Assembly (NCBI RefSeq): GCF_902652985.1
Contig: NC_047024.1
Coordinates: forward strand, 26,474,001 to 26,538,000
Source of the DNA: Pecten maximus
Taxonomy: Eukaryota
DNA: 64,000 nt
Reading direction: 5' to 3'
A program made the position numbers and the translations under genes. The notes under the pieces are model-generated. The model searched no databases. It was given only the letters and a program-made list of their open reading frames with translations, and was not told the origin of the DNA. Within the stretch, counting starts at the first letter, position 1. Each line of letters begins with the position of its first letter. Below are positions 6,344 through 21,664 of the stretch, in pieces.

Positions 6344-9300
6344 AATTGTATATGATAAAATCCTTCTTTTTCTATTTTCTGTACTTTATTAAAGTGTTAG
6401 TACAAACATGGTGTACAAGCATACATACTGTACTTGTCAGTCCCGTCCCGGGCGAAAGCAGCCCGGGACAGAGAATAGATGTTATTCCTCTGCCTCCAAA
6501 TGTAGTCTGGCGCCGTTAACAGATATAAGGTGTTCCTTATATAGATAGGAACATGCCAGTTGTTTACAATTCTTAACCTTTGAACTATATTACATAAAAC
6601 TATTACATGATCTCATAGGAAATAGCTGGCCAACGGATTAAAGGTACATAGGAAGGTCAATAGGTAATTACGTAAGTAAATCAATTAATACCCTTTTGCC
6701 AGGTAACACAAGGGTCACCCAGTTCCAAAGGGTCGGTTATTACATAAGTAAAACAATACACTTTGGCCAGGTAAACACATGGGTCACACCAAAGGGTTAG
6801 ACAGCTTATATATTAATCAATTTCACTTATTACACTACTATAGCACATGTAGATTTTTGAAAAAAACAACAACCAAAAAAACAATTCAAGTTAATTGATT
6901 TTAAATTAATCTTTGAAGCCGTACTCCTCCATTGTTCAATTTCTTAGTAATCATCACAGATATGCACTGCATAAAATATTGTCAAATTGTAGCAACTGTA
7001 CGCCATATATCATTATTATATATATGTGACCTCTTGTTACCAATTAAATATTGAAACCTCTTTAACAAGGCCCGTCAGACTAAACCGCCGATGGCCACTT
7101 CCTTCGTCACTTATACATATTGTATATCACCCGTAAACATACTCATTGCGTATGGAGAGAGAGCACTTCGTTCAATTTAGTATCGGAGGCGATAAAAACA
7201 AGATGGATGCCACTATTTCAAAGGCATATTTCATATGGTCCTATTAAAGACCGTTTAATTAAAGCTAAGAATTTAGTACACGAGATTTAGTACACGAAAT
7301 TTCGGACCATGTGGGGCGTGATCGGGTGACCAAACACAGGACAGGTCAGATGTCCAAATATCAAGCCTAATTAGCTTAACATTTGAACATCTTATCTAAA
7401 AGTTAATTGTTAAGAACGTTGATCAAAAACTAGAAATGTCTGGTGATAGGTTACAATATTTATGGATAATATTGATATTAATATTGCAAGTTAGAATATT
7501 TGTTTTCTTGAAAATTGTAACATAATGGGCTAAGAATAATGTTAGAATATGTATAACTTTATACATCATTTAAAATGGTAGCTATATATCAGAGACAGCA
7601 GGTCAAAGGTCACGTAATACTCGGTTGATGAAAACAACACCCGTGATTGACAGGTAAAGTGCAGAATCTGATACAGAGCTCAGGGGTGTAGGCCGCGTGA
7701 TTTCCTGAGTGATAGAACAGGGAAAGGGTCACTCCAATCTCAGATGGTATTGGTATAGTCATGATAAGCGATGACAACAAAAATAGGTTACTGGGAGGGG
7801 GAGCAATGATAAGGTACATTTGTTGTAGCACGTGTATTGTTAATGATATGCAAAGAGGCGGGGCGGAACAGGGGATATTAGGTATTAGAGGGAGAAAGCT
7901 AAAGGTGAGGAGAGAAAACAAGAGGGTCAGTTCAGTTCATTTATTCCGTAGGCCTTCCGGCCTTCAGGTGAAAATAACAGCATGTGATTATGCATCAATA
8001 CATCATACGAATACATGTAAAAAGGAGAGTGATCCGCGTACTATTGTAATATAAAAAATAATGATAATATTGTATTATGAATTCAATTACATGTAGTGGT
8101 AATTAGATCAATTTCAAATGCTAAATTACTGTGATATTTTGCCATAACTTAGAGCTACACTGTAGTTTAAACAGTGTTTATCTATATTCAATACAAGTGT
8201 ACATATTCATTGCAAATTGTACATTGAAGTAATAAACTATTGTAAACCATATGGTGTTGTTGCGTTACACAATATTAGTTAAAATAAACAATGGGCAAAC
8301 ATTTTTTGTCGACATTTTTTTTTTACTAAGAATACTTACCCTAAAAGAGTTTCAGCTGAACAGATCCTCATTTGTTTGTGTTAATTGTATGATAATATGA
8401 GACCTTACATAAATATACAATATTATAATATACAATGTTATAATATACAATGTCATTGTATTAAAGATTTATTCTTATCCCTTATATTTAGTGTTTTTTG
8501 TTGGCTCTTTTTGTTTTCTGGTTTACACAATGTGGTGTTATTTTTAAATATCTGACAATAATAATTATGGTAGTGTAAATGTTTATAAATGTGTGCCTTA
8601 ACCGCAATAAAAGGGCTCGCTGACAATGGGGTCGCCTGTCGCCATAACAACGTGCTTGTCAACTCATTTTCCTAAACTGGTAAATTAGCACTGCGTTTTG
8701 TTGGCATGGTTTCAGACACTGGCTGTCCTGTGTTGTAATAACTATGTCCTCTGGGAAGAGACATTATCTACACTGCTTCGGATAGTACGGGTCTCCCGTA
8801 TGTTAATTTAATCTTAGTTATAAAAGTGACAAATATAACGCCAATATTACCATTTGTCCATCTTGACACGTATTGTATTGTTTATATACGATTTAGAAAT
8901 CCGTGTAACGCTTTTAATGTGTTTGGGTGACTAATAAATCTGAGAAAACGAAATTGAAAATTGAATAACATAATCACCAATGATACATTATAGTTTTATT
9001 AACTTTTCTATAATTCCTATGGTCCGGCTCGCACGTCACTACCGGTTATATGCAGCCTTAAGTAGTAAGTGAGCTGATGTATTTAGCACGAGTTCTGCGT
9101 GAGTACGGCATACATTTAAGCATTGAACGGCTTTCAGTTGGCATTCATATTGACTATGAATGCCAACTGAAAGCCGTTCAATGCTTATATTTACCATCTG
9201 CGATTTTTTATTTGTTGTGCGATTTTTTTTTTTTTTGAAATTTTCAAATTCAAATTTCAGTTGGCAGTTCATAAGCTGGTGAACTCGCAACTGGATTGGT

Positions 9301-12950: not shown

Positions 12951-13004
12951 ACGATATCGTATCCACGATATTGATCTTAAATACCAAATTATTTACATGA
13001 CAAT

Positions 13005-13490
13005 TGGCCACTTTCCAATTCAGCGCCACCTGGCGGATCATAATCCAAGATGGCGGCGTATGGTGTGTCCGTGTCACAGCACATGTTTTTAGTGTTTTAT
13101 CAGCGCTACGCGTCAAATTAGACTTTTTCCAGAAAATCTTCGTGCTTAAATGCGTATATAGGTAAGTAAGTCTTTATTTTGGAATGATTTTATAAGGAAA
13201 TAAGGCGATATAAGACCGATATACACTTGTTCAAATACCCCAGGTGAGAAACCCTGCAGAATGCTATGTAACTCATTTACACAGGTGTAGCATTAAAAAT
13301 CGGTCATTGTATGATTCACGATTCATTTATTAGTTCTTGATTTGTATAGATCGAATAGAATCAGTCACTGCTTATGAAATGACGGCATCATAACGATGAT
13401 AGCGAAATAAATAACGATATATTTATAAATACTATTTGCACCAGGTAACATTACAGGTAATTTTGAAAGGTGTTTTGAATGCCGCCATTT
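13005..13490 (+). repeat. Left TIR (486 bp)
   Basis: Reverse complement of 18937-19422 with only 3 mismatches (13423, 13424, 13461); gapped similarity continues to GTCACGTGA at ~13529. Confidence 0.97.
13021..13167 (+). promoter_or_regulatory. Putative TIR-embedded promoter and non-coding first exon of the transposase gene
   Basis: CTCF-like CAGCGCCACCTGGCGG 13021-13036; YY1 motif CAAGATGGCGGC 13046-13057; CpG-rich stretch; donor AG|GTAAGT (GT at 13162); acceptor TTTTTCAG| at 13683, 7 nt before the ATG. Confidence 0.6.
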
Positions 13491-13690
13491 AGCCTATACT
13501 ATTTTTAGAGCAGGTGAAAAGTCACGTGATCTATCTAGGATAGTGATCTTCCATTGATTCATTGTATTTTCTATTTCATGTCACCTGACATTCGTATTTA
13601 AATAAATATTATAAAAAGTACTGGTATAGGCCTAGTGGTTTAAAAACATATTATGAAAACAAACTTTGATTTATATTTTTCAGATACAAA

Positions 13691-15184
13691 ATGCCTCATC
13701 ACTGCTGTGTGCCACATTGTACAAATAATTCCAAGACAAAAGATGGTTACTCTTTTCATACATTCCCTAAAGACCCTTCAGTGGCAAAAAAGTGGGTGAT
13801 TGCTATACGCAGAGATCAAGGTGCAGATTTTGATATCAACAAAGAGACAAGAGTATGCTCCGTTCACTTTAACGCAGACTCTTACCATCCTACCACTGCT
13901 ATTCATGTTCGAAAACGTTTGCGAGGGACTGCTGTACCATCAGTATTTCAATGGACTGTACAGAAACCCGTCAGAAGGAAACTCAGCCTTCTCATGAAAA
14001 GTCCAAATTGTGGAAATGTAGAATCCAACAATACAAGTTTCCCAGAAAAACATGTTTTGGAAAGCTGTAATAATGATTGTGATGAGCCTTTGCTTGTAGA
14101 CCAGCCTTTTAGTAGTGAGGATAGTTTAACAAATGTGGATTGGGCTGAATCTCCAGACAAGAGTAAATTAAAAGAAACCAACAGTGTTCTACTTCACATT
14201 AGGAACAAAGAGAAGTTTTCAATTCTACGGTTTTGTAATTCCGATTCTGATATCAGATATTACACAGGATTTTCATCATACCTAGCCTTACACTGTTTCT
14301 TCACATTCTTACAACCGGCTTGTAGCTTTTTGTACTATGTAGGGACAGACAACACATCTGAAGGGACACCTTACATATTTCTCAACAAACGTGGAAAGTC
14401 CAGATCCTTGTCGCCTATGGAAGAGTTATTTGTAACTCTTGTTCGTCTTCGGAAAGGTTTACCAGAAAAACATTTAGGTGACCTGTATAACCTTTCTGAG
14501 GGACATGTGTCAAAAATACTCAACACTTGGATTGCTTTTCTTGACAACAGACTGTCTTCGCTACCAATTTGGCCACAAAGAGATCATGTGAATAACACCA
14601 TGCCAGCAATTTTCAAGACATATTTTTCCTCTACTCGAACCATAATTGACTGCACAGAAATATTCATAGAACACCCATCTGCCTCGGAGTGTCAGCGGGA
14701 GACATTTTCCTCGTACAAACATCACAACACTGCAAAGGGTCTCATTGCCATCGCACCAAGTGGCCAAATCACATTTATTTCTCCGCTCTACTCTGGGCGA
14801 TGTTCAGACAAGAAAATAATTCGCCATTGTGGATTGTTGGACCTGATAGAGGAAGGAGATGGTGTCATGGTTGATCGCGGCTTTGACATTACAACAGATC
14901 TTGAAAACAGGGGTGCTCATCTTATAATGCCTGCCTTTTTAAGTGGAAAAGACCAATTCACTCCTGATCAGTTATCTCAATCCAGAGAAATAGCAACAGT
15001 GCGCGTCCATGTTGAGAGGGCTGTGAGGAAGATCAAAGAATTTGAAATTCTGAGACACACAGTTCCCATCACATTGTGTCCTATGCTTGAAAAGATATGG
15101 AATATTTGTGGACATTTGGCTAATTTCTCAGGGAGTGGAACATTGTTTAGACAACCCAAAGATGTCTCCACTTGTAAAGAATAA
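13691..15184 (+). CDS. Transposase: THAP zinc finger + HTH + DDE (Harbinger/ISL2EU DDE_Tnp_4 type), 497 aa
   Basis: THAP CCVPHC...W...VCSVHF...AVPSVF; HTH LSPMEELFVTLVRLR...VSKILNTW; catalytic IIDCTE, VMVDRGF, RVHVERAVRKIK; FSSYKHHNTAKGLI motif; uninterrupted ORF. Confidence 0.96.
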   Translation: MPHHCCVPHCTNNSKTKDGYSFHTFPKDPSVAKKWVIAIRRDQGADFDINKETRVCSVHFNADSYHPTTAIHVRKRLRGTAVPSVFQWTVQKPVRRKLSLLMKSPNCGNVESNNTSFPEKHVLESCNNDCDEPLLVDQPFSSEDSLTNVDWAESPDKSKLKETNSVLLHIRNKEKFSILRFCNSDSDIRYYTGFSSYLALHCFFTFLQPACSFLYYVGTDNTSEGTPYIFLNKRGKSRSLSPMEELFVTLVRLRKGLPEKHLGDLYNLSEGHVSKILNTWIAFLDNRLSSLPIWPQRDHVNNTMPAIFKTYFSSTRTIIDCTEIFIEHPSASECQRETFSSYKHHNTAKGLIAIAPSGQITFISPLYSGRCSDKKIIRHCGLLDLIEEGDGVMVDRGFDITTDLENRGAHLIMPAFLSGKDQFTPDQLSQSREIATVRVHVERAVRKIKEFEILRHTVPITLCPMLEKIWNICGHLANFSGSGTLFRQPKDVSTCKE

Positions 15185-16407
15185 AGACACATTGATAATG
15201 CTCTCATGTTTAATGAAATGTCAGATTCTTTTCATATATGAACACTTTATAATATGATACATATAAAACATGTTTCCATGGTGATCAAAGTTTCAAAAAT
15301 ATTATGTTGAATTTTGTACAATTTTTGTGACAATAAAATGCATTTTCAAATACTGTCATAGTAGTAATACCATGAAAAAATTCCAAGCAAAAAAGTTTGT
15401 AAATAATACATTTCTACAAATGAAATATCAGAAATTGTCCAACCGATATTCATATCATCATATATATGCATCAAACATTTATCACTAGTCATACATTGTA
15501 ATATTCCAGTTGTTGTCTAGATCTATAAAAATGTATTGAAGAAATTTTATATTATCACAAGTGATGATATAGGACAACTTGGATTTCACTGCATCCTTTC
15601 TTAAGTTAATCTTTTTTCACTGTTGAAAATATAAAAATAATCTGTCTAAATTATAAACTATATTGAACCATGTATATGAAATGTCAGCATAGCGCAGGAA
15701 ATGAATATTGTTCACATATTTTTAAACTTACTCTTTACAAGAAGTAATGACTATAAATAAATAATTTAACTAAGAAACTGTGAAATTGAATGTGGACTAA
15801 AAATACAAAATTCAATAGTAACAACTTTCATTTTAATTTTTACATGTTACAAGTCATAATTAAAAAATATCACAATTCAATGTCTTAATGACTATGAAAC
15901 TAATAACAGTATTTCAACAAAAATTCTGTACAGTACAATTGTGACAATGGACATAATTTGTATGACTTGTGCTTGTATTCAATTTTATGCTACCATACAT
16001 GGTTTAAGATTGTACTAGTGTACACTGAAACCATCAATATATATGTACATTGTGCTTTTAACACGAGACATGCATATGTCCTACACTAACTATCATATTG
16101 AACATTACATGTATATGTGTCAGTCACGAGTGCAAAAAAGGAATATAATGTATGAAATATCCTATGTAAAAATTAGAATAAATTTTGTTTTCCCCAAGTC
16201 ACTTTTGTACATGTTGTATGTAAAACCCATCTGCACAGACATGTGATAATTATGATAATCAACACATTGAAAGAATCTAGTCAACATGCGAAAATATATG
16301 GCTACACACCATTTTTCAATATACATAAAGTAAAGTTTGTATTTAAAATGTCAGTCTGGATGGGTATTGCATGTGCCTCTTGTACTAAACAATACAAGTC
16401 GAGACCT

Positions 16408-18126
16408 TCACTGATCTTTTGTGCGGAGACAATCAACAAAATGTGGGAGCAAATGGCTGAAATAGATACTGTTGAGTTTAGGCAACATATTAGAACAGAA
16501 AAACTCTGAATCACGATGTATCTCTACTATGGCAATGTCTTCCGGAGGAACGAATACTACAAAGTCACACTTCTCTATTCCACACAAATTCAGTTGTCCT
16601 TGCACTTGATAAAAGTAGTCGTGGGATTTTTTGAGTTGGATTTCACCAGTTGTCGGGTTTTTTTCCAAATAAAAGTTTTTCTCCTTCATTTGTGATAATA
16701 TACTTGTCTTCTTCTTGAATACAGAGTATGGACATTTGATTTCCACCAGTCTAATCTCATTGTTGACTTTTACTAGTCTATCAGGTGTCACTCCAAGATG
16801 GGGTAGTTTGGGGTTTACAACAAGACCAACTGGTGAACTAGCACATGGTTTTTCCTTTTGATACAAAGCCAAGGCTTGAGCTTCATAATTGATACCGTGA
16901 CGGACACTTTTTGACGTGAAAAACTTCTTCTTTTGTTGAAACGTATTCACAGGGTCTGTTGTATTTTTCAGGCGACAAAAAACACCAAAGTTAGATGCAG
17001 TAATACGGTATTGTCTCTCATTAAACCAGAATGAAGTCTTGCTCTGTAGCCTTGTATTTTTCTCTATGAACTTGGCTCTTTGGGTGTCTACACTCACATT
17101 AACTAGGTAATGTTGCTGGATGTCTGATTTGAGTGCCTGTGGCAATTCTATTTCACTGAAGCTAGTATTGTCAACCATCTCAAACAAATCTGCGTCTAGG
17201 TTTACATCACAGCGTTGCCTACATGCCACAGGTTTGAAATTGTTTTCTCGAATGGTGTCCAACACTGGAAGGTTTAAACCTGATGCATCAAACAGGTTAA
17301 CAAGTTTGGTTAGATCATTACCTGTAACAGATCTGGCAAACTCGGGCACAGGGTTATGAGTAGCTGCAGCTGCACACAAATCCTTCTTCACGGTCTTAAA
17401 CGGATCATGTTTGACAAAGTTGATGTCTCTGAACAGAAGAGGCTCATCAGACGTTGGTTTTCTAACATGCCACAATTGCAACTTGTCTGTGCATGTTTTC
17501 ACATCGGGCATTGTTTTTACATCCTGGCGGTGAAAGTCAATAAGACAGAACAATGTGGCTACAAGGTGCTTACATTGCCCATCTATTCCTGCTGGACATG
17601 AGCATGTCCCCCACTTTAATTTTGTTCCTCCATGTTTCAGGCACATGTATATGTTATAAGTTTTCTGCTTCATTGCAGCTTGGCATTGACCTCTGAAATA
17701 TATCAAGTTTCCAGTTGTGGTACTGCTCAAACCTGTTATTTTTCCCTCTCGGAATAGTGTCCAGCCTTCAACCCTGTGGCGTTTTGTTTTCACAAAGTCA
17801 AGAACACTTTCATCGATGTCCTCAATAGGGAAATCTTCACCCCATCCTGTCGTTGGTGCCACGCGTCCTTGAAAACTAAGGAGTCCTTTTTTTGAAATTA
17901 AAGGGTTTATTTTCATTAGTTCACAGCAGCCAGGACAAAACCATTTTGCAATGTTCTTAGCTTCTTCTTCATCAAGATCAACACAAGATGGATGGAACCA
18001 ATCATCACAGAGATCACATCTAACCATTATTTTTTCTGGATCTTCTGGGGTCTTGCAAACACAGTGCAGTGTACGGTCAGTAGATGCAGACTGGTTCATC
18101 TCCTCATGATTTCTTTTTCGAGACAT
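16408..18126 (-). CDS. PHD finger - SWIM zinc finger - YqaJ/lambda-exonuclease (PD-(D/E)xK) protein, 572 aa
   Basis: PHD C4HC3 CVC...MVRCDLCDDWFHPSCV...WFCPGC; SWIM CSCPAGIDGQCKH; YqaJ WFNERQYRITASNF, HGINYE, GVTPDRLV...VEIKCPY, YFYQVQGQL. True start is likely MSRKR at 18126, because the upstream MCLFIFVYLY stretch is a polypyrimidine tract and acceptor (exon starts 18145). Confidence 0.94.
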   Translation of the reverse strand: MSRKRNHEEMNQSASTDRTLHCVCKTPEDPEKIMVRCDLCDDWFHPSCVDLDEEEAKNIAKWFCPGCCELMKINPLISKKGLLSFQGRVAPTTGWGEDFPIEDIDESVLDFVKTKRHRVEGWTLFREGKITGLSSTTTGNLIYFRGQCQAAMKQKTYNIYMCLKHGGTKLKWGTCSCPAGIDGQCKHLVATLFCLIDFHRQDVKTMPDVKTCTDKLQLWHVRKPTSDEPLLFRDINFVKHDPFKTVKKDLCAAAATHNPVPEFARSVTGNDLTKLVNLFDASGLNLPVLDTIRENNFKPVACRQRCDVNLDADLFEMVDNTSFSEIELPQALKSDIQQHYLVNVSVDTQRAKFIEKNTRLQSKTSFWFNERQYRITASNFGVFCRLKNTTDPVNTFQQKKKFFTSKSVRHGINYEAQALALYQKEKPCASSPVGLVVNPKLPHLGVTPDRLVKVNNEIRLVEIKCPYSVFKKKTSILSQMKEKNFYLEKNPTTGEIQLKKSHDYFYQVQGQLNLCGIEKCDFVVFVPPEDIAIVEIHRDSEFFCSNMLPKLNSIYFSHLLPHFVDCLRTKDQ

Positions 18127-18304
18127 GGTTACTTGTTGTTGGTACCTATATAAGTAAACAAAAATAAATAGACACATGAAGATTAATAAGGTTAAAGCTT
18201 ATCAATAAATAATAGTACAGCTTATGATATCGTAACATATTAAGCTTTTCCATGGTAATATTAGCTGTTTATATTATAATAAACCATTAAGACTATATGC
18301 ATGT

Positions 18305-18683
18305 ATTTATTGCATTTTACTGACAGAAATCCTATATTATCACTAGTGATGATATAAGGTTGTTGACTGTACTGCATGGAAGAAATCTGATAAAATCACT
18401 AGTCATAATCAAATGTAAGATTTCTTGAATTCAATGCATTAACATAAAAGATACATTCAATGTGCTTTCAGATGTCTGCAAATGCATTTTAAGTTTAACT
18501 GCAAATGCAATAAACAGAAAATTTAATAATTTCTCGTTTGATATAAAATATATATCACTTGTATTTCAGATTTTATAATTAGATAACACTTGTGCTACAC
18601 ACTCGTGAAAATATAATTTATAAATAAATCTGTCATACTCATGAAATATATCTTATATTAAATAGGTAACTCTGAATATCCTC
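18305..18683 (-). repeat. Decayed palindromic repeat nested in the putative intron of the YqaJ gene
   Basis: Ends (ATTTATTGCATTTTAC... and ...GAATATCCTC) and internal TCACTAGTGA and CACTCGTGAAAATAT resemble the reverse complement of the 22152-22580 element. Confidence 0.5.
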
Positions 18684-18936
18684 ATTGATTCCTATGAGCC
18701 ATATATATATCAAAATATTCAAAAGCAGATTTTACCCTGTTCTTAAATAGGCCTAATAAACAACATAACTGAAGATATATATATTTGTCATTATAACATA
18801 AAACAGGGCCAAAAACAAAACATCAACATGACTGCTAAAAATCTTTTTTTATTTTTGGTTAAAAAAATATTTTCATCATCATGTTTTGTCATTATCAACC
18901 TCTTGATGTCACGTGACTCTACCTGCTCGAAATATA

Positions 18937-19422
18937 AAATGGCGGCATTCAAAACACCTTTCAAACTTACCTGTAATGTTACCTGGTGCAAATAGTATTT
19001 ATGGATATATCGTTATTTATTTCGCTATCATCGTTATGATGCCGTCATTTCATAAGCAGTGACTGATTCTATTCGATCTATACAAATCAAGAACTAATAA
19101 ATGAATCGTGAATCATACAATGACCGATTTTTAATGCTACACCTGTGTAAATGAGTTACATAGCATTCTGCAGGGTTTCTCACCTGGGGTATTTGAACAA
19201 GTGTATATCGGTCTTATATCGCCTTATTTCCTTATAAAATCATTCCAAAATAAAGACTTACTTACCTATATACGCATTTAAGCACGAAGATTTTCTGGAA
19301 AAAGTCTAATTTGACGCGTAGCGCTGATAAAACACTAAAAACATGTGCTGTGACACGGACACACCATACGCCGCCATCTTGGATTATGATCCGCCAGGTG
19401 GCGCTGAATTGGAAAGTGGCCA
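18937..19422 (-). repeat. Right TIR (486 bp)
   Basis: Reverse complement of 13005-13490. Confidence 0.97.
19260..19406 (-). promoter_or_regulatory. Putative TIR-embedded promoter and non-coding first exon of the YqaJ gene
   Basis: Mirror copy of 13021-13167: CTCF-like 19391-19406, YY1 19370-19381, donor GT at 19265-19264; acceptor TTTGTTTACTTATATAG| before 18145, 19 nt upstream of ATG 18126. Confidence 0.6.
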
Positions 19423-20224
19423 ATTAAGCAAACCTGTGTAACGACGTTCTTAAGAAGTTTACACAGGTTTTGCGGAATTCCATATCCTTTAAATCGCCGG
19501 AGTCACGCATGGTCAGGCTACAAAAATAAATATTCGTTAACATACAATACATGATGTTGTTTTAACTAATTACGTGTGTAAAACAAGTCCATTCTTGTCG
19601 ATTCATGTCCATACCTGGCTCAGGACTTTATTTCTGTTTACCTATGAGTTTGAAATAGGTTACGCACCGAGTTTTGTGGATCATGACACGGAGATCTTGA
19701 ATATGTAAGCCAAATTTATAAGACTGAGTCGAGCAAGAGGGTTACAAAGAAGATTGAACAAGGGATTATTGTTGTATTGGAATTAGTGATTAAGGATTGC
19801 TGGAGTATTCGCGAAAGAAGATTATTGGAGTTCTTACGAAAGGCTCAATTTTCGAAATTTTAAAGAACAGGCTATTTAAGTAGAGCAACAATGTTACTGA
19901 GTATTACATACTGGAAAAGACCCGAGATGTTCCTGGGGAGGGGGAGCCAAACCCATCTGTTCACTAACATAGTCCGATGGGAGACGATAATATGCACACA
20001 ACCGACCTAGGGGTATTCTCTAAATAATTGAATCATTCTTTTCTGGAACATTGTTGTCAGATCAAGGGGCGGGGCAGTTATCCACAAAAGCTGCCCCCAA
20101 AATTCATAGCTTACTTTACGTCACACCTACAGGGGCCTGGACATTACCTTACGGCCTGTTAAGATGGCGGTCTGTTCAAATCGCAGTACGTCCGTTGTCC
20201 GTCCTAATCTATATCCTCTAATCT

Positions 20225-20402: not shown

Positions 20403-21215
20403 TTAAAACTGCTTGATAAAAGTTTTACAGGTAATTTTGCTAGCTAATACATCTCTGTACGTCGAGGTCATACTGTCACTGAAACAAAATGGCGGCGCCC
20501 ATGCAAAATCATAATCTGTGCTACAAATAATTGTTAGTATGGGCGATCTAAATTTCATATACGCTTTCAGGGGATGCTGATAAACAAAACTGTTAAACAC
20601 TTTCTTTATGATTTTTATTCTTTTTTTTTATCTTAAATATTCTGGCGTAAACACAGGAATGTACTACATGTAATACGCTAAGGTCTGGCGCAGTCATGTG
20701 TAACACAAATAAAAAAATAAAATCTCTTTGGTCGGACACCTGTTCGTGGAAAAGGTATAGTACAAGTTTTATCAAAAGAATATATCATACAATGTAAATG
20801 TAATTTCATACGGCATTCAAATAAAAATGCTGACTGGCATGGCTATTTTACCCAGGTAAAGCCAATTTCAAATATTCACATTAAAATTCCTCAATTTTTT
20901 CGGTGCTTTTGGCGTAAAATTACAGGGACAGTTTATGAGTAAAATACGTCGTCGTCAATACAAAAGTATATACGTGTGTATTGTATGCAAGATTTAGTTG
21001 CCCTTAGCTTAAAGGGAAATGTCCTGTTTTCACTTCCCTTTCTATATCTCTATCCCCTCCAGATTGGGTGTTCCTGTGCTCGATCCCTTCTGGTGACTCA
21101 CGCCTTCTCTCCTTTATCCGTCTATACCAAGCCCCTTTTGTTCCTCACTCTCCATCCGCTTCCTTTCCGACCTTCTTTGTTGCTCTATTATCACTCAATA
21201 CACCCCCCCCCCCCC

Positions 21216-21664
21216 TCCTACACTCCAGTCACCACTCCTGACCGGATATGTCCTCTGTACTCTGTATCCTCCCCACATCCCTGTTATATCCCTACACTCC
21301 AGTCACCACTCCTGACCGGATATGTCCTCTGTACTCTGTATCCTCCCCACATCCCTGTTATATCTCTACACTCCAGTCACCACTCCTGACCGGATATGTC
21401 CTCTGTACTCTGTATCCTCCCCACATCCCTGTTATATCTCTACACTCCAGTCACCACTCCTGACCGGATATGTCCTCTGTACTCTGTATCCTCCCCACAT
21501 CCCTGTTATATCCCTACACTCCAGTCACCACTCCTGACCGGGTATGTCCCTCTGTACCCTCCCCACATCCCTATTATATCCCTACACTCCAGTCAGCACT
21601 CCTGACCGGATATGTCCCTCTGTACTCTGTACCCTCCCCACATCCCTATTATATCTCTACACTG
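21216..21664. repeat. Minisatellite, 74-bp unit, ~6 copies
   Basis: Unit CTACACTCCAGTCACCACTCCTGACCGGATATGTCC...; staggered ORFs start 74 nt apart (21248, 21322, 21396, 21470). Confidence 0.95.

What the first reader, a model, noticed from the sequence alone, without database searches (positions are those of the whole stretch)
13021..19406. TIRs appear to double as mirror-image promoter + first exon for both convergent genes
Seen: each TIR contains a YY1 consensus (CAAGATGGCGGC) in a CpG-rich stretch, then a perfect donor AG|GTAAGT (GT at 13162 on +, 19265 on -). Each ORF has a polypyrimidine acceptor just upstream of its ATG (TTTTTCAG|ATACAAAATG at 13683; TTACTTATATAG|GTACC...ATG at 18145). 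The ATGs inside the TIR exon hit stops, so it is non-coding. Inference: one duplicated module drives both genes inward with an identical 5' leader, through introns of ~0.52 and ~1.12 kb. This would couple transposase and exonuclease expression and explain both the convergent layout and the long TIRs. I do not know of this architecture being described.
Basis: partly seen in the sequence, partly recalled or inferred. Interest (0 to 1): 0.88.

Follow-up and report, generated by a model that had tools for sequence, protein, structure and literature searches.

The report
Transposon end repeats carry shared exon
In a young scallop DNA transposon, each of the two identical end repeats supplies the untranslated first exon, and probably the promoter, of one of its two inward-facing genes; RNA data confirm the splicing, other molluscs share the layout, and it resembles what is known for maize MuDR.

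Summary
Window 13002-19425 is a 6.4-kb ISL2EU-type DNA transposon of Pecten maximus. It has 489-bp TIRs that are 99% alike, a THAP/HTH/DDE_Tnp_4 transposase gene on the + strand and a convergent PHD/YqaJ nuclease gene on the - strand. Contigs from public RNA runs contain both predicted GT..AG junctions: 13161^13684 in three studies and leader^18145 in two. No other junction appears. Each gene is therefore a roughly 160-nt non-coding exon lying in the TIR plus one coding exon. Three further mollusc genomes (Pinctada, Dreissena, the chiton Liolophura), an unnamed Logan contig and a second Pecten family keep the plan: conserved terminal blocks, a donor 144-190 nt from the end, and an acceptor within about 20 nt of each ATG examined. 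A Liolophura gene model uses the same kind of junction. Three points remain open.
- The promoter: contigs cannot show transcript starts, so a promoter inside the TIR is inferred, not shown.
- The "YY1 site": it may instead be a conserved short upstream ORF (MAAYGV).
- The RNA source: it comes from sister copies, not demonstrably from this copy.
TIR promoters driving two convergent genes are already known from maize MuDR. This is a new variant of a known kind, of moderate interest.

The parts
13002..13005 (.). AATT at the left boundary (ISL2EU target A|AT|T; holds the TSD)
   Evidence: All 20 TIR ends found in the genome are preceded by AATT and then GGCC, and the flanks differ immediately outside. 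The ISL2EU target is described in PMC4482050.
13002..13490 (+). Left terminal inverted repeat
   Evidence: 489 nt, 99% complementary to 18937-19425; 3 differences.
18937..19425 (-). Right terminal inverted repeat
13006..13037 (+). Conserved terminal block 1, the likely transposase binding/cleavage site (inferred)
   Evidence: Nearly invariant across 8 ends from 4 named species plus one unnamed Logan contig.
13050..13121 (+). Conserved block 2. It holds the YY1-like ATGGCGGC and starts a 23-codon upstream ORF (MAAYGV...)
   Evidence: Across species all third codon positions vary while first and second positions hardly do.
13002..13161 (+). Non-coding exon 1 (leader) of the transposase mRNA; 5' limit not mapped
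   Evidence: RNA contigs cover 13002/13029-13161 and join 13161 to 13684.
13162..13683 (+). Intron 1 of the transposase gene (522 nt, GT..AG)
   Evidence: The junction skipping 522 nt is seen in X2 (158 nt on the shorter side), X4 and X10. Intron contigs are 4-6x deep against 29-66x for exon contigs.
13691..15184 (+). Transposase CDS, 497 aa (THAP, HTH_Tnp_4, DDE_Tnp_4); exon 2 starts at 13684
   Evidence: 100% identical to a Pecten maximus RefSeq protein.
15185..16407 (.). Region between the two stop codons, with the 3' UTRs of both convergent genes
   Evidence: RNA contigs run unbroken from 13684 to 18145. Poly(A) signals lie on + at 15180, 15332, 15756, 16177 and on - at 15837, 15214. This copy lacks 32 nt at 16204.
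16408..18126 (-). PHD-YqaJ nuclease CDS, 572 aa; exon 2 starts at 18145
18146..19265 (-). Intron 1 of the YqaJ gene (1120 nt, GT..AG)
   Evidence: Leader joined to 18145, reported as an 'opposite strands' joint because the right leader equals the reverse of the left. Seen in X10 contig 8 and X4 contig 18.
19266..19425 (-). Non-coding exon 1 (leader) of the YqaJ mRNA, identical to the left leader
13481..13528 (+). Module inside intron 1 at the inner TIR edge: inverted YY1-like GCCGCCATTT plus E-box CACGTG (mirror copy about 18910-18946)
   Evidence: Also present in Pinctada and Pecten family B. Function unknown.

Best explanation
This is an autonomous ISL2EU (PHIS superfamily) cut-and-paste transposon of Pecten maximus. 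Each of its two convergent genes has two exons. Exon 1 is about 160 nt, non-coding, and lies in the outermost part of the TIR. Exon 2 holds the whole coding sequence. Because exon 1 and its donor lie inside the inverted repeat, the transposase mRNA and the PHD-YqaJ nuclease mRNA carry the same 5' leader, including the same short upstream ORFs (shown). Transcription most likely starts in the terminal few tens of bases of each TIR. It would be driven by a promoter inside the CpG-rich TIR, so the two genes are switched on together wherever the element lands (inferred). The invariant terminal ~35 nt is probably the transposase binding and cleavage site. If so, transposase binding and transcription start overlap, which would allow self-regulation (inferred).
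For: RNA evidence:
- Junction 13161^13684 (GT..AG) is present in contigs of X2 (a declared RNA library, 158 nt on the shorter side), X4 and X10, three different studies.
- The leader is joined to 18145 in X10 and X4.
- One X4 contig carries both junctions.
- There are no other junctions, and intron contigs are 5-15 times shallower than exon contigs.
- All genomic copies that keep a complete 497-aa reading frame (100% hits) have the TIR end 687-689 nt before the transposase start, so the spliced form is not a DNA copy in this assembly.

Copies:
- The terminal 74 nt occur only at the 21 TIR ends of about 8 independent insertions.
- Seven copies keep a complete transposase frame and at least six a complete nuclease frame.

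Conservation:
- Pecten family B has about 55% protein identity and no DNA similarity detectable by blastn. It keeps the terminal blocks, a GTAAGT donor in both TIRs and an acceptor 7 nt before the YqaJ ATG.
- Pinctada has 538-nt perfect TIRs, a donor at +161 and strong acceptors before both ATGs.
- Dreissena, Liolophura and Logan contig L081 show the same plan.
- The Liolophura protein model P0008 is encoded by exon 7001-7093 joined to 8054 onward.

Promoter-like features:
- CpG observed/expected is 1.27 in the leader against 0.27-0.51 elsewhere in the element.
- The YY1-like box is far more frequent in the window than chance predicts.
- In the distant Ptychodera element the 70-nt TIRs carry AAGATGGCG, and both ATGs lie 41-54 nt inside the TIRs.
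Against:
- In X1 and X2 the contigs reach the very first base of the element. One X2 contig runs 16 letters beyond it, so some RNA or DNA reads cross the boundary.
- In X1 the transposase exon is continuous with the last 310 nt of its intron and no spliced contig was listed. In X2 the YqaJ acceptor is read through. Unspliced or internally started forms therefore exist.
- All four runs carry 32 nt at 16204 that this window copy lacks, so expression of this particular copy is not shown.
- X1, X4 and X10 are labelled RNA only by guess.
- The YY1 identity of block 2 is uncertain.
- In Liolophura the donors lie outside the repeat, so identical leaders are not essential.
Confidence: 0.7

Rival explanations
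1. The leader exon and its splicing are real, but the element has no promoter of its own at the tip. Transcription enters from flanking host DNA, and the TIR only offers a donor that links such read-through RNA to the two coding exons.
For: Contigs in X1 and X2 cover the element from its first base. One X2 contig overshoots the end by 16 letters. No TATA box or other classical core element was recognised upstream of block 2 by eye.
Against: The same leader is found in four studies although the ~8 insertions have unrelated flanks. Terminal blocks, donor position and acceptors are conserved across mollusc classes. The TIR is the only CpG-rich part of the element. Convergent genes at both ends would need a host promoter on each side.
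Confidence: 0.12
2. The main promoter lies further in, at the inner edge of the TIR (the inverted GCCGCCAT plus CACGTG module around 13481-13528 and its mirror). The TIR-tip leader is a minor or tissue-specific isoform.
For: In X1, the deepest run, the transposase exon is contiguous with intron sequence from 13374 on, and no spliced contig was listed. The GCCAT...CACGTG module is conserved in Pecten A, Pecten B and Pinctada.
Against: In X2, X4 and X10 the spliced contigs carry the exon depth, while intron contigs are 5-15 times shallower. The X1 contig begins upstream of the module, in a stretch that looks hyper-edited, so it is not a clean start. The module is absent from Dreissena and from the right end of Liolophura.
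Confidence: 0.13
3. The junctions are artefacts, either assembly chimeras between repeated 10-mers or DNA deletions, not splicing.
For: The leader end and the YqaJ acceptor share 10 letters, so that junction could also arise by microhomology. The leader sides of the X4 and X10 junctions are only about 20-33 nt.
Against: Both junctions fall exactly on GT..AG. The transposase junction has 158 nt on its shorter side in a declared RNA library. The junctions recur in three studies. The short sides equal the k-1 overlap expected where a de Bruijn graph branches at a shared exon. No intron-less DNA copy is in the assembly. An independent gene model in Liolophura uses the homologous junction.
Confidence: 0.03

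Closest known systems
ISL2EU group of the PHIS (PIF/Harbinger-ISL2EU-Spy) superfamily of DNA transposons (Han et al. 2015, PMC4482050)
   Same: THAP + HTH + DDE transposase, a second ORF with a YqaJ exonuclease domain, target A|AT|T, TIRs with GG at or next to the tip, animal hosts.
   Different: The TIRs are 489 nt, against 6-259 nt in the 25 surveyed families. The element is 6.4 kb, against a ~4.8 kb average. Gene structure, introns and promoters are not mentioned in the three ISL2EU papers searched, so the TIR-borne spliced leader appears undescribed there.
Maize MuDR (Mutator superfamily)
   Same: Two convergently transcribed genes (transposase plus a helper). The ~215-bp TIRs hold the transposase binding site, both promoters and the transcript starts. 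Antisense RNA arises from failed termination between the genes (PMC3440606, PMC10401008).
   Different: A different superfamily and a plant host. In MuDR I know of no non-coding exon confined to the TIR that is spliced onto an acceptor just before the ATG (from memory, not checked). Here the promoter in the TIR is inferred, not shown.
Human LINE-1 5' UTR with its YY1 site
   Same: A YY1 site a few tens of bases inside the element, associated with initiation at the element's first bases (site at +13 to +21; PMC4908685 citing Athanikar 2004). This would fit RNA contigs that reach the tip here.
   Different: LINE-1 is a retrotransposon with a single sense promoter. Here the box lies at +46 to +57, its YY1 flank is not conserved between families, and binding is untested.

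Membership tests
ISL2EU (PHIS superfamily) | Transposase with DDE_Tnp_4 catalytic domain, HTH and N-terminal THAP | tested here: met
   Pfam: DDE_Tnp_4 5.8e-41, THAP 8.2e-18, HTH_Tnp_4 3.2e-13.
ISL2EU (PHIS superfamily) | Second ORF encoding a YqaJ-type exonuclease | tested here: met
   Pfam: YqaJ 1.4e-13, Viral_alk_exo 1.1e-05, plus PHD 6e-10.
ISL2EU (PHIS superfamily) | Insertion into A|AT|T with an AT duplication | tested here: inconclusive
   All 20 ends are flanked by AATT, as expected. No empty site was examined, so a 2-bp AT duplication cannot be told from a 4-bp AATT duplication.
ISL2EU (PHIS superfamily) | TIRs usually beginning with GG | tested here: met
   GGCC follows AATT at both ends.
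MuDR-like expression layout (analogy, not membership) | Two convergently transcribed genes reading inward from the two TIRs | tested here: met
   ORFs on opposite strands. RNA contigs join the leader to each gene.
MuDR-like expression layout (analogy, not membership) | Promoters and transcript starts inside the TIRs | not testable with these tools
   Only assembled contigs were available. They cover the leader up to the tip but cannot show starts.
Mutator superfamily | MULE-type transposase | tested here: not met
   The transposase is DDE_Tnp_4, so it is not a member. The resemblance is one of layout only.
YY1-box core promoter | Match to the AAGATGGCGGC consensus, conserved among relatives | tested here: inconclusive
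   Exact match in Pecten family A and one mismatch in Dreissena. In the other families only ATGGC is kept, and the block varies at every third base like a coding frame. Factor binding was not testable.

The most novel reading that the evidence does not exclude
Molluscan ISL2EU transposons share a conserved, symmetrical expression cassette at both ends. It comprises a terminal transposase site, a promoter that starts transcription at or near the element tip, and a ~150-nt non-coding leader exon with a conserved upstream ORF (MAAYGV). The leader is spliced onto an acceptor just before the transposase ATG on one side and the YqaJ nuclease ATG on the other. This would be the first TIR-borne spliced leader described for an animal DNA transposon. 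It would tie the two proteins to one transcriptional and translational control.
Probability: 0.45. Interest if true: 0.6.

Novelty: new variant of a known kind. Interest (0 to 1): 0.52.

Why it matters
How DNA transposons with two genes keep the two products in step is poorly known outside maize MuDR. For ISL2EU elements neither the role of the YqaJ nuclease nor the gene structure has been described in the papers I searched. A conserved leader exon in each end repeat gives a concrete model that can be tested at the bench: one control module duplicated by the inverted repeat, with shared upstream ORFs. It also corrects gene models, since both genes have a 5' exon in the TIR. It explains why the outer ~160 nt of these TIRs are under constraint beyond transposase binding. 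It also offers a compact bidirectionally usable promoter-plus-leader candidate from a mollusc. It does not overturn anything, because the principle of promoters in TIRs driving convergent genes is established.

Tried and rejected
- Exact-protein look-ups of the two Pecten proteins found nothing on record. No Pecten transcript contig could therefore be read directly.
As a result the transposase side of Pecten family B and a dozen more distant YqaJ loci could not be fetched. The family B copy on C1 has a decayed transposase gene that starts just outside the DNA I hold.
- The Logan contigs of relatives (L074-L077, L082, L083) still have the polypyrimidine tract and AG before the ATG. They are unspliced and say nothing about splicing.
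- The ENA contig of P0004 shows the convergent pair but gave no DNA.
- blastn found no similarity between the family A and family B upstream regions. The shared blocks appeared only on alignment.
- Our own findings index held nothing for this place or these words.
- I considered that the high depth at the element tip came from many short derivative elements. I rejected this because the terminal 74 nt occur only at the 21 TIR ends.
- Hydractinia (36-nt TIRs, transposase only, ATG 7 nt after the TIR) and Ptychodera (no leader intron) show that the spliced leader is not universal among relatives.
Exons were handled by reference, and the upstream-ORF reading of the joined leader was done only in a local script. 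The assembly was therefore not searched for an intron-less DNA copy by junction sequence. Spacing of TIR and gene in all copies was used instead.
Full report
WHAT IS THERE. Window 13002-19425 is bounded by a 489-nt inverted repeat, 13002-13490 and 18937-19425, 99% complementary with three differences. Between the repeats lie two convergent ORFs. On the + strand, 13691-15184 encodes 497 aa with THAP, HTH_Tnp_4 and DDE_Tnp_4 domains. On the - strand, 18126-16408 encodes 572 aa with PHD and YqaJ / viral alkaline exonuclease domains. This is the gene pair of ISL2EU elements of the PHIS superfamily (PMC4482050). The transposase is 100% identical to a RefSeq protein of Pecten maximus. The assembly has 918 Mb in 3983 contigs.

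- The exact YY1-type match is at 13047-13057 and 19370-19380.
- The donor TAG|GTAAGT has its GT at 13162 (+) and 19265 (-).
- A pyrimidine-rich acceptor ends at 13683, 7 nt before the transposase ATG.
- A second acceptor puts the exon start at 18145, 19 nt before the nuclease ATG.
- All four leader ATGs run into stops inside the leader.

RNA EVIDENCE. I laid 13002-19001 against contigs of four public runs from four studies. Run X2 is a declared RNA library. X1, X4 and X10 are labelled RNA by guess, but their exon-to-intron depth contrast behaves like RNA.
- A junction skipping 522 nt with GT..AG ends, 13161^13684, is present in X2 with 158 nt on the shorter side, and also in X4 and X10.
- The right-hand leader is the reverse complement of the left one, and it lay outside the 6000 letters allowed. 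The nuclease junction therefore appears as an "opposite strands" joint from the left leader to 18142-18145. It is present in X10 (contig 8) and X4 (contig 18).
- That X4 contig carries both junctions, one at each end.
- The short leader sides (about 20-33 nt) are what a k=31 graph gives where three paths share one exon: the intron and two different second exons.
- No other junction lies between 13684 and 18145. Each gene is therefore a non-coding exon 1 plus one coding exon.
- Intron contigs are 3-15x deep against 12-124x for exon contigs.
- In every copy that keeps a complete 497-aa reading frame (100% hits), the TIR end lies 687-689 nt before the transposase start. The spliced form is therefore not a DNA copy in this assembly.

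There are three caveats. In X1 the transposase exon is continuous with the last 310 nt of its intron, and no spliced contig was listed. In X2 the nuclease acceptor is read through. All four runs contain 32 nt at 16204 that this window copy, alone among the genomic copies, lacks. The RNA therefore comes from sister copies, and expression of this particular copy is not shown.

THE FAMILY. The TIR occurs at 21 places, about 8 independent insertions plus two segmental duplicates, at 97-100% identity. Seven copies keep a complete transposase frame, and at least six keep a complete nuclease frame. All 20 complete ends are preceded by AATT and then GGCC, and the flanks are unrelated. This fits the ISL2EU target A|AT|T. 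The terminal 74 nt occur nowhere else in the assembly.

CONSERVATION. This is the strongest argument that the layout is functional.
- Pecten family B. The nuclease is about 55% identical to family A, copies are about 88% alike, and blastn finds no similarity to family A upstream of the gene. It still has AATT, the same terminal motif, an ATGGC block and a GTAAGT donor about 190 nt from the end. The donor is kept in both TIRs of the C1 copy and in two other copies. An acceptor lies 7 nt before the nuclease ATG.
- Pinctada imbricata. The transposase is 68% identical. It has perfect 538-nt TIRs, a donor at +161 (the same position as in Pecten), and strong acceptors before both ATGs.
- Dreissena polymorpha. 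Donors lie at +170 and +173. The acceptors end 0 and 8 nt before the two ATGs.
- Liolophura sinensis, a chiton. Donors lie at +148 and +144. The acceptor with the pyrimidine tract ends 12 nt (transposase) and 14 nt (nuclease) before the ATG. Its annotated protein P0008 starts with 31 residues encoded by 7001-7093 and continues at 8054. That is the homologous exon-1-to-exon-2 junction. I do not know whether RNA supported that model.
- Logan contig L081, from an unnamed species. The donor is at +150 and the acceptor lies directly before the ATG.

An alignment of eight ends shows two conserved blocks, the terminal ~35 nt and a block at +49 to +70, followed by free divergence. Further out the plan changes. 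In a hemichordate element (Ptychodera) the genes are convergent with 70-nt TIRs that contain AAGATGGCG, but both ATGs lie 41-54 nt inside the TIRs with no leader intron. A cnidarian relative (Hydractinia) has 36-nt TIRs and a transposase only. Other ISL2EU-like families in Pecten have the two genes head to head. The spliced leader therefore looks like a trait of one mollusc-wide lineage.

THE PROMOTER QUESTION. That the TIR contains the promoter is inferred. Four observations favour it:
- The same leader is found in four studies although the insertions have unrelated flanks.
- The TIR is the only CpG-rich part of the element, with observed/expected 1.27 and 1.14 against 0.27-0.51 elsewhere.
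- The terminal blocks are conserved.
- In Ptychodera the ATGs sit so close to the ends that any promoter must be terminal.

Three things are unresolved or count against it:
- Contigs cannot show transcript starts.
- In X10 the leader contig begins at 13029. In X1 a contig covers 13002-13039 at depth 79, far above the intron depth of about 6, and short derivative elements cannot explain this.
- The X2 contig runs 16 letters beyond 13002.

If RNA really starts at the tip, the promoter would have to act from downstream. This is reported for the YY1 site at +13 to +21 of human LINE-1 (PMC4908685).

THE "YY1 SITE". The YY1 consensus is exact in Pecten family A and nearly so in Dreissena. In the other families only ATGGC is kept. 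Read from its ATG, the block is ATG GCN GCN TAT GGN GTN. All five third positions of codons 2-6 vary, and only 2 of 10 first and second positions do, both in Pinctada alone (hypergeometric P = 0.007). That is the pattern of a conserved short upstream ORF, MAAYGV followed by M or I. It would place the transcript start upstream of +49. The block may serve both as a DNA site and as an ORF, and this needs experiment.

COMPARISON WITH WHAT IS KNOWN. The element meets the ISL2EU criteria that I could test. Its TIRs are about twice the longest in the published survey (6-259 nt), and the three ISL2EU papers searched never mention introns, promoters or UTRs. The closest functional analogue is maize MuDR. 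It has two convergently transcribed genes, ~215-bp TIRs holding the transposase site, both promoters and the transcript starts, and antisense RNA from failed termination. What is new is the spliced, non-coding, TIR-borne leader shared by both genes, in an animal element of another superfamily. "Explains the long TIRs" is only partly right. Liolophura manages with ~85-nt TIRs and separate donors, and in Pecten and Pinctada two thirds of the TIR is intron. That intron part holds a conserved GCCAT...CACGTG module of unknown role.

RIVALS. Read-through from host DNA with the TIR serving only as a donor: 0.12. A main promoter at the inner TIR edge with the tip leader as a minor isoform: 0.13. An artefact: 0.03. 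The arguments are given in the rival-explanations section.

LIMITS.

VERDICT. The promoter in the TIR is likely but unproven. The finding is a new variant of a known kind, of moderate interest.

Noticed in passing
window 13408-13461: One deep contig of run X1 carries 13 T-to-C changes within 54 nt and no other kind of change nearby. Only two of them (13423, 13424) are right-TIR variants. This looks like A-to-I hyper-editing of RNA of the opposite sense. It would mean that some transcripts run through a TIR in the outward direction and pair with the other TIR.
   Followed up: partly
window 16204: This copy lacks a 32-nt segment that every other genomic copy examined carries (one duplicated copy with a 1-nt difference) and that all four RNA runs have. 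The deletion lies between short TTT repeats in the region between the two genes.
   Followed up: yes
window 13002 (left boundary), run X2: The spliced X2 contig extends exactly 16 letters beyond the element end. Sixteen is (k+1)/2 for k=31, the overshoot expected at a perfect palindromic end-to-end junction of two TIRs. It could equally be a flank. The letters were not shown.
   Followed up: no
window 13050-13121 and mirror; L078, L079, L080, L081: A short upstream ORF starting MAAYGV is conserved in the leader across bivalves and a chiton, with variation confined to third codon positions (P = 0.007).
   Followed up: partly
window 13481-13528 and 18910-18946; L078 about 7245-7292: An inverted YY1-like GCCGCCAT followed about 40 nt later by an E-box CACGTG lies at the inner TIR edge inside intron 1. 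It is shared by Pecten family A, Pecten family B and Pinctada. It may be an enhancer or a second promoter.
   Followed up: partly
L033, L034/L038 (Pecten family B): The nuclease gene of family B has a gap of about 430 nt after the PHD finger (near residue 81) that family A lacks. It is probably an extra intron or an insertion.
   Followed up: no
L043-L051 (other Pecten loci): ISL2EU-like families with about 36-40% identity have the transposase and a short YqaJ-only gene head to head, about 600 nt apart, not convergent.
   Followed up: no
G000 C7:28379847-28394602; C6:44546738-44581033; C17:15114719-15171514: The C7 copy is 14.7 kb long, with about 8 kb extra between the nuclease ATG and the right TIR, that is, inside intron 1. 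The C6 and C17 copies lie in inverted and tandem segmental duplications with shared flanks.
   Followed up: no
window 20161-20171, 20486-20496, 21144-21663: Two more near-matches to the YY1-type box lie just right of the element, close to a relatively GC-rich stretch. A 74-bp tandem repeat array follows.
   Followed up: no
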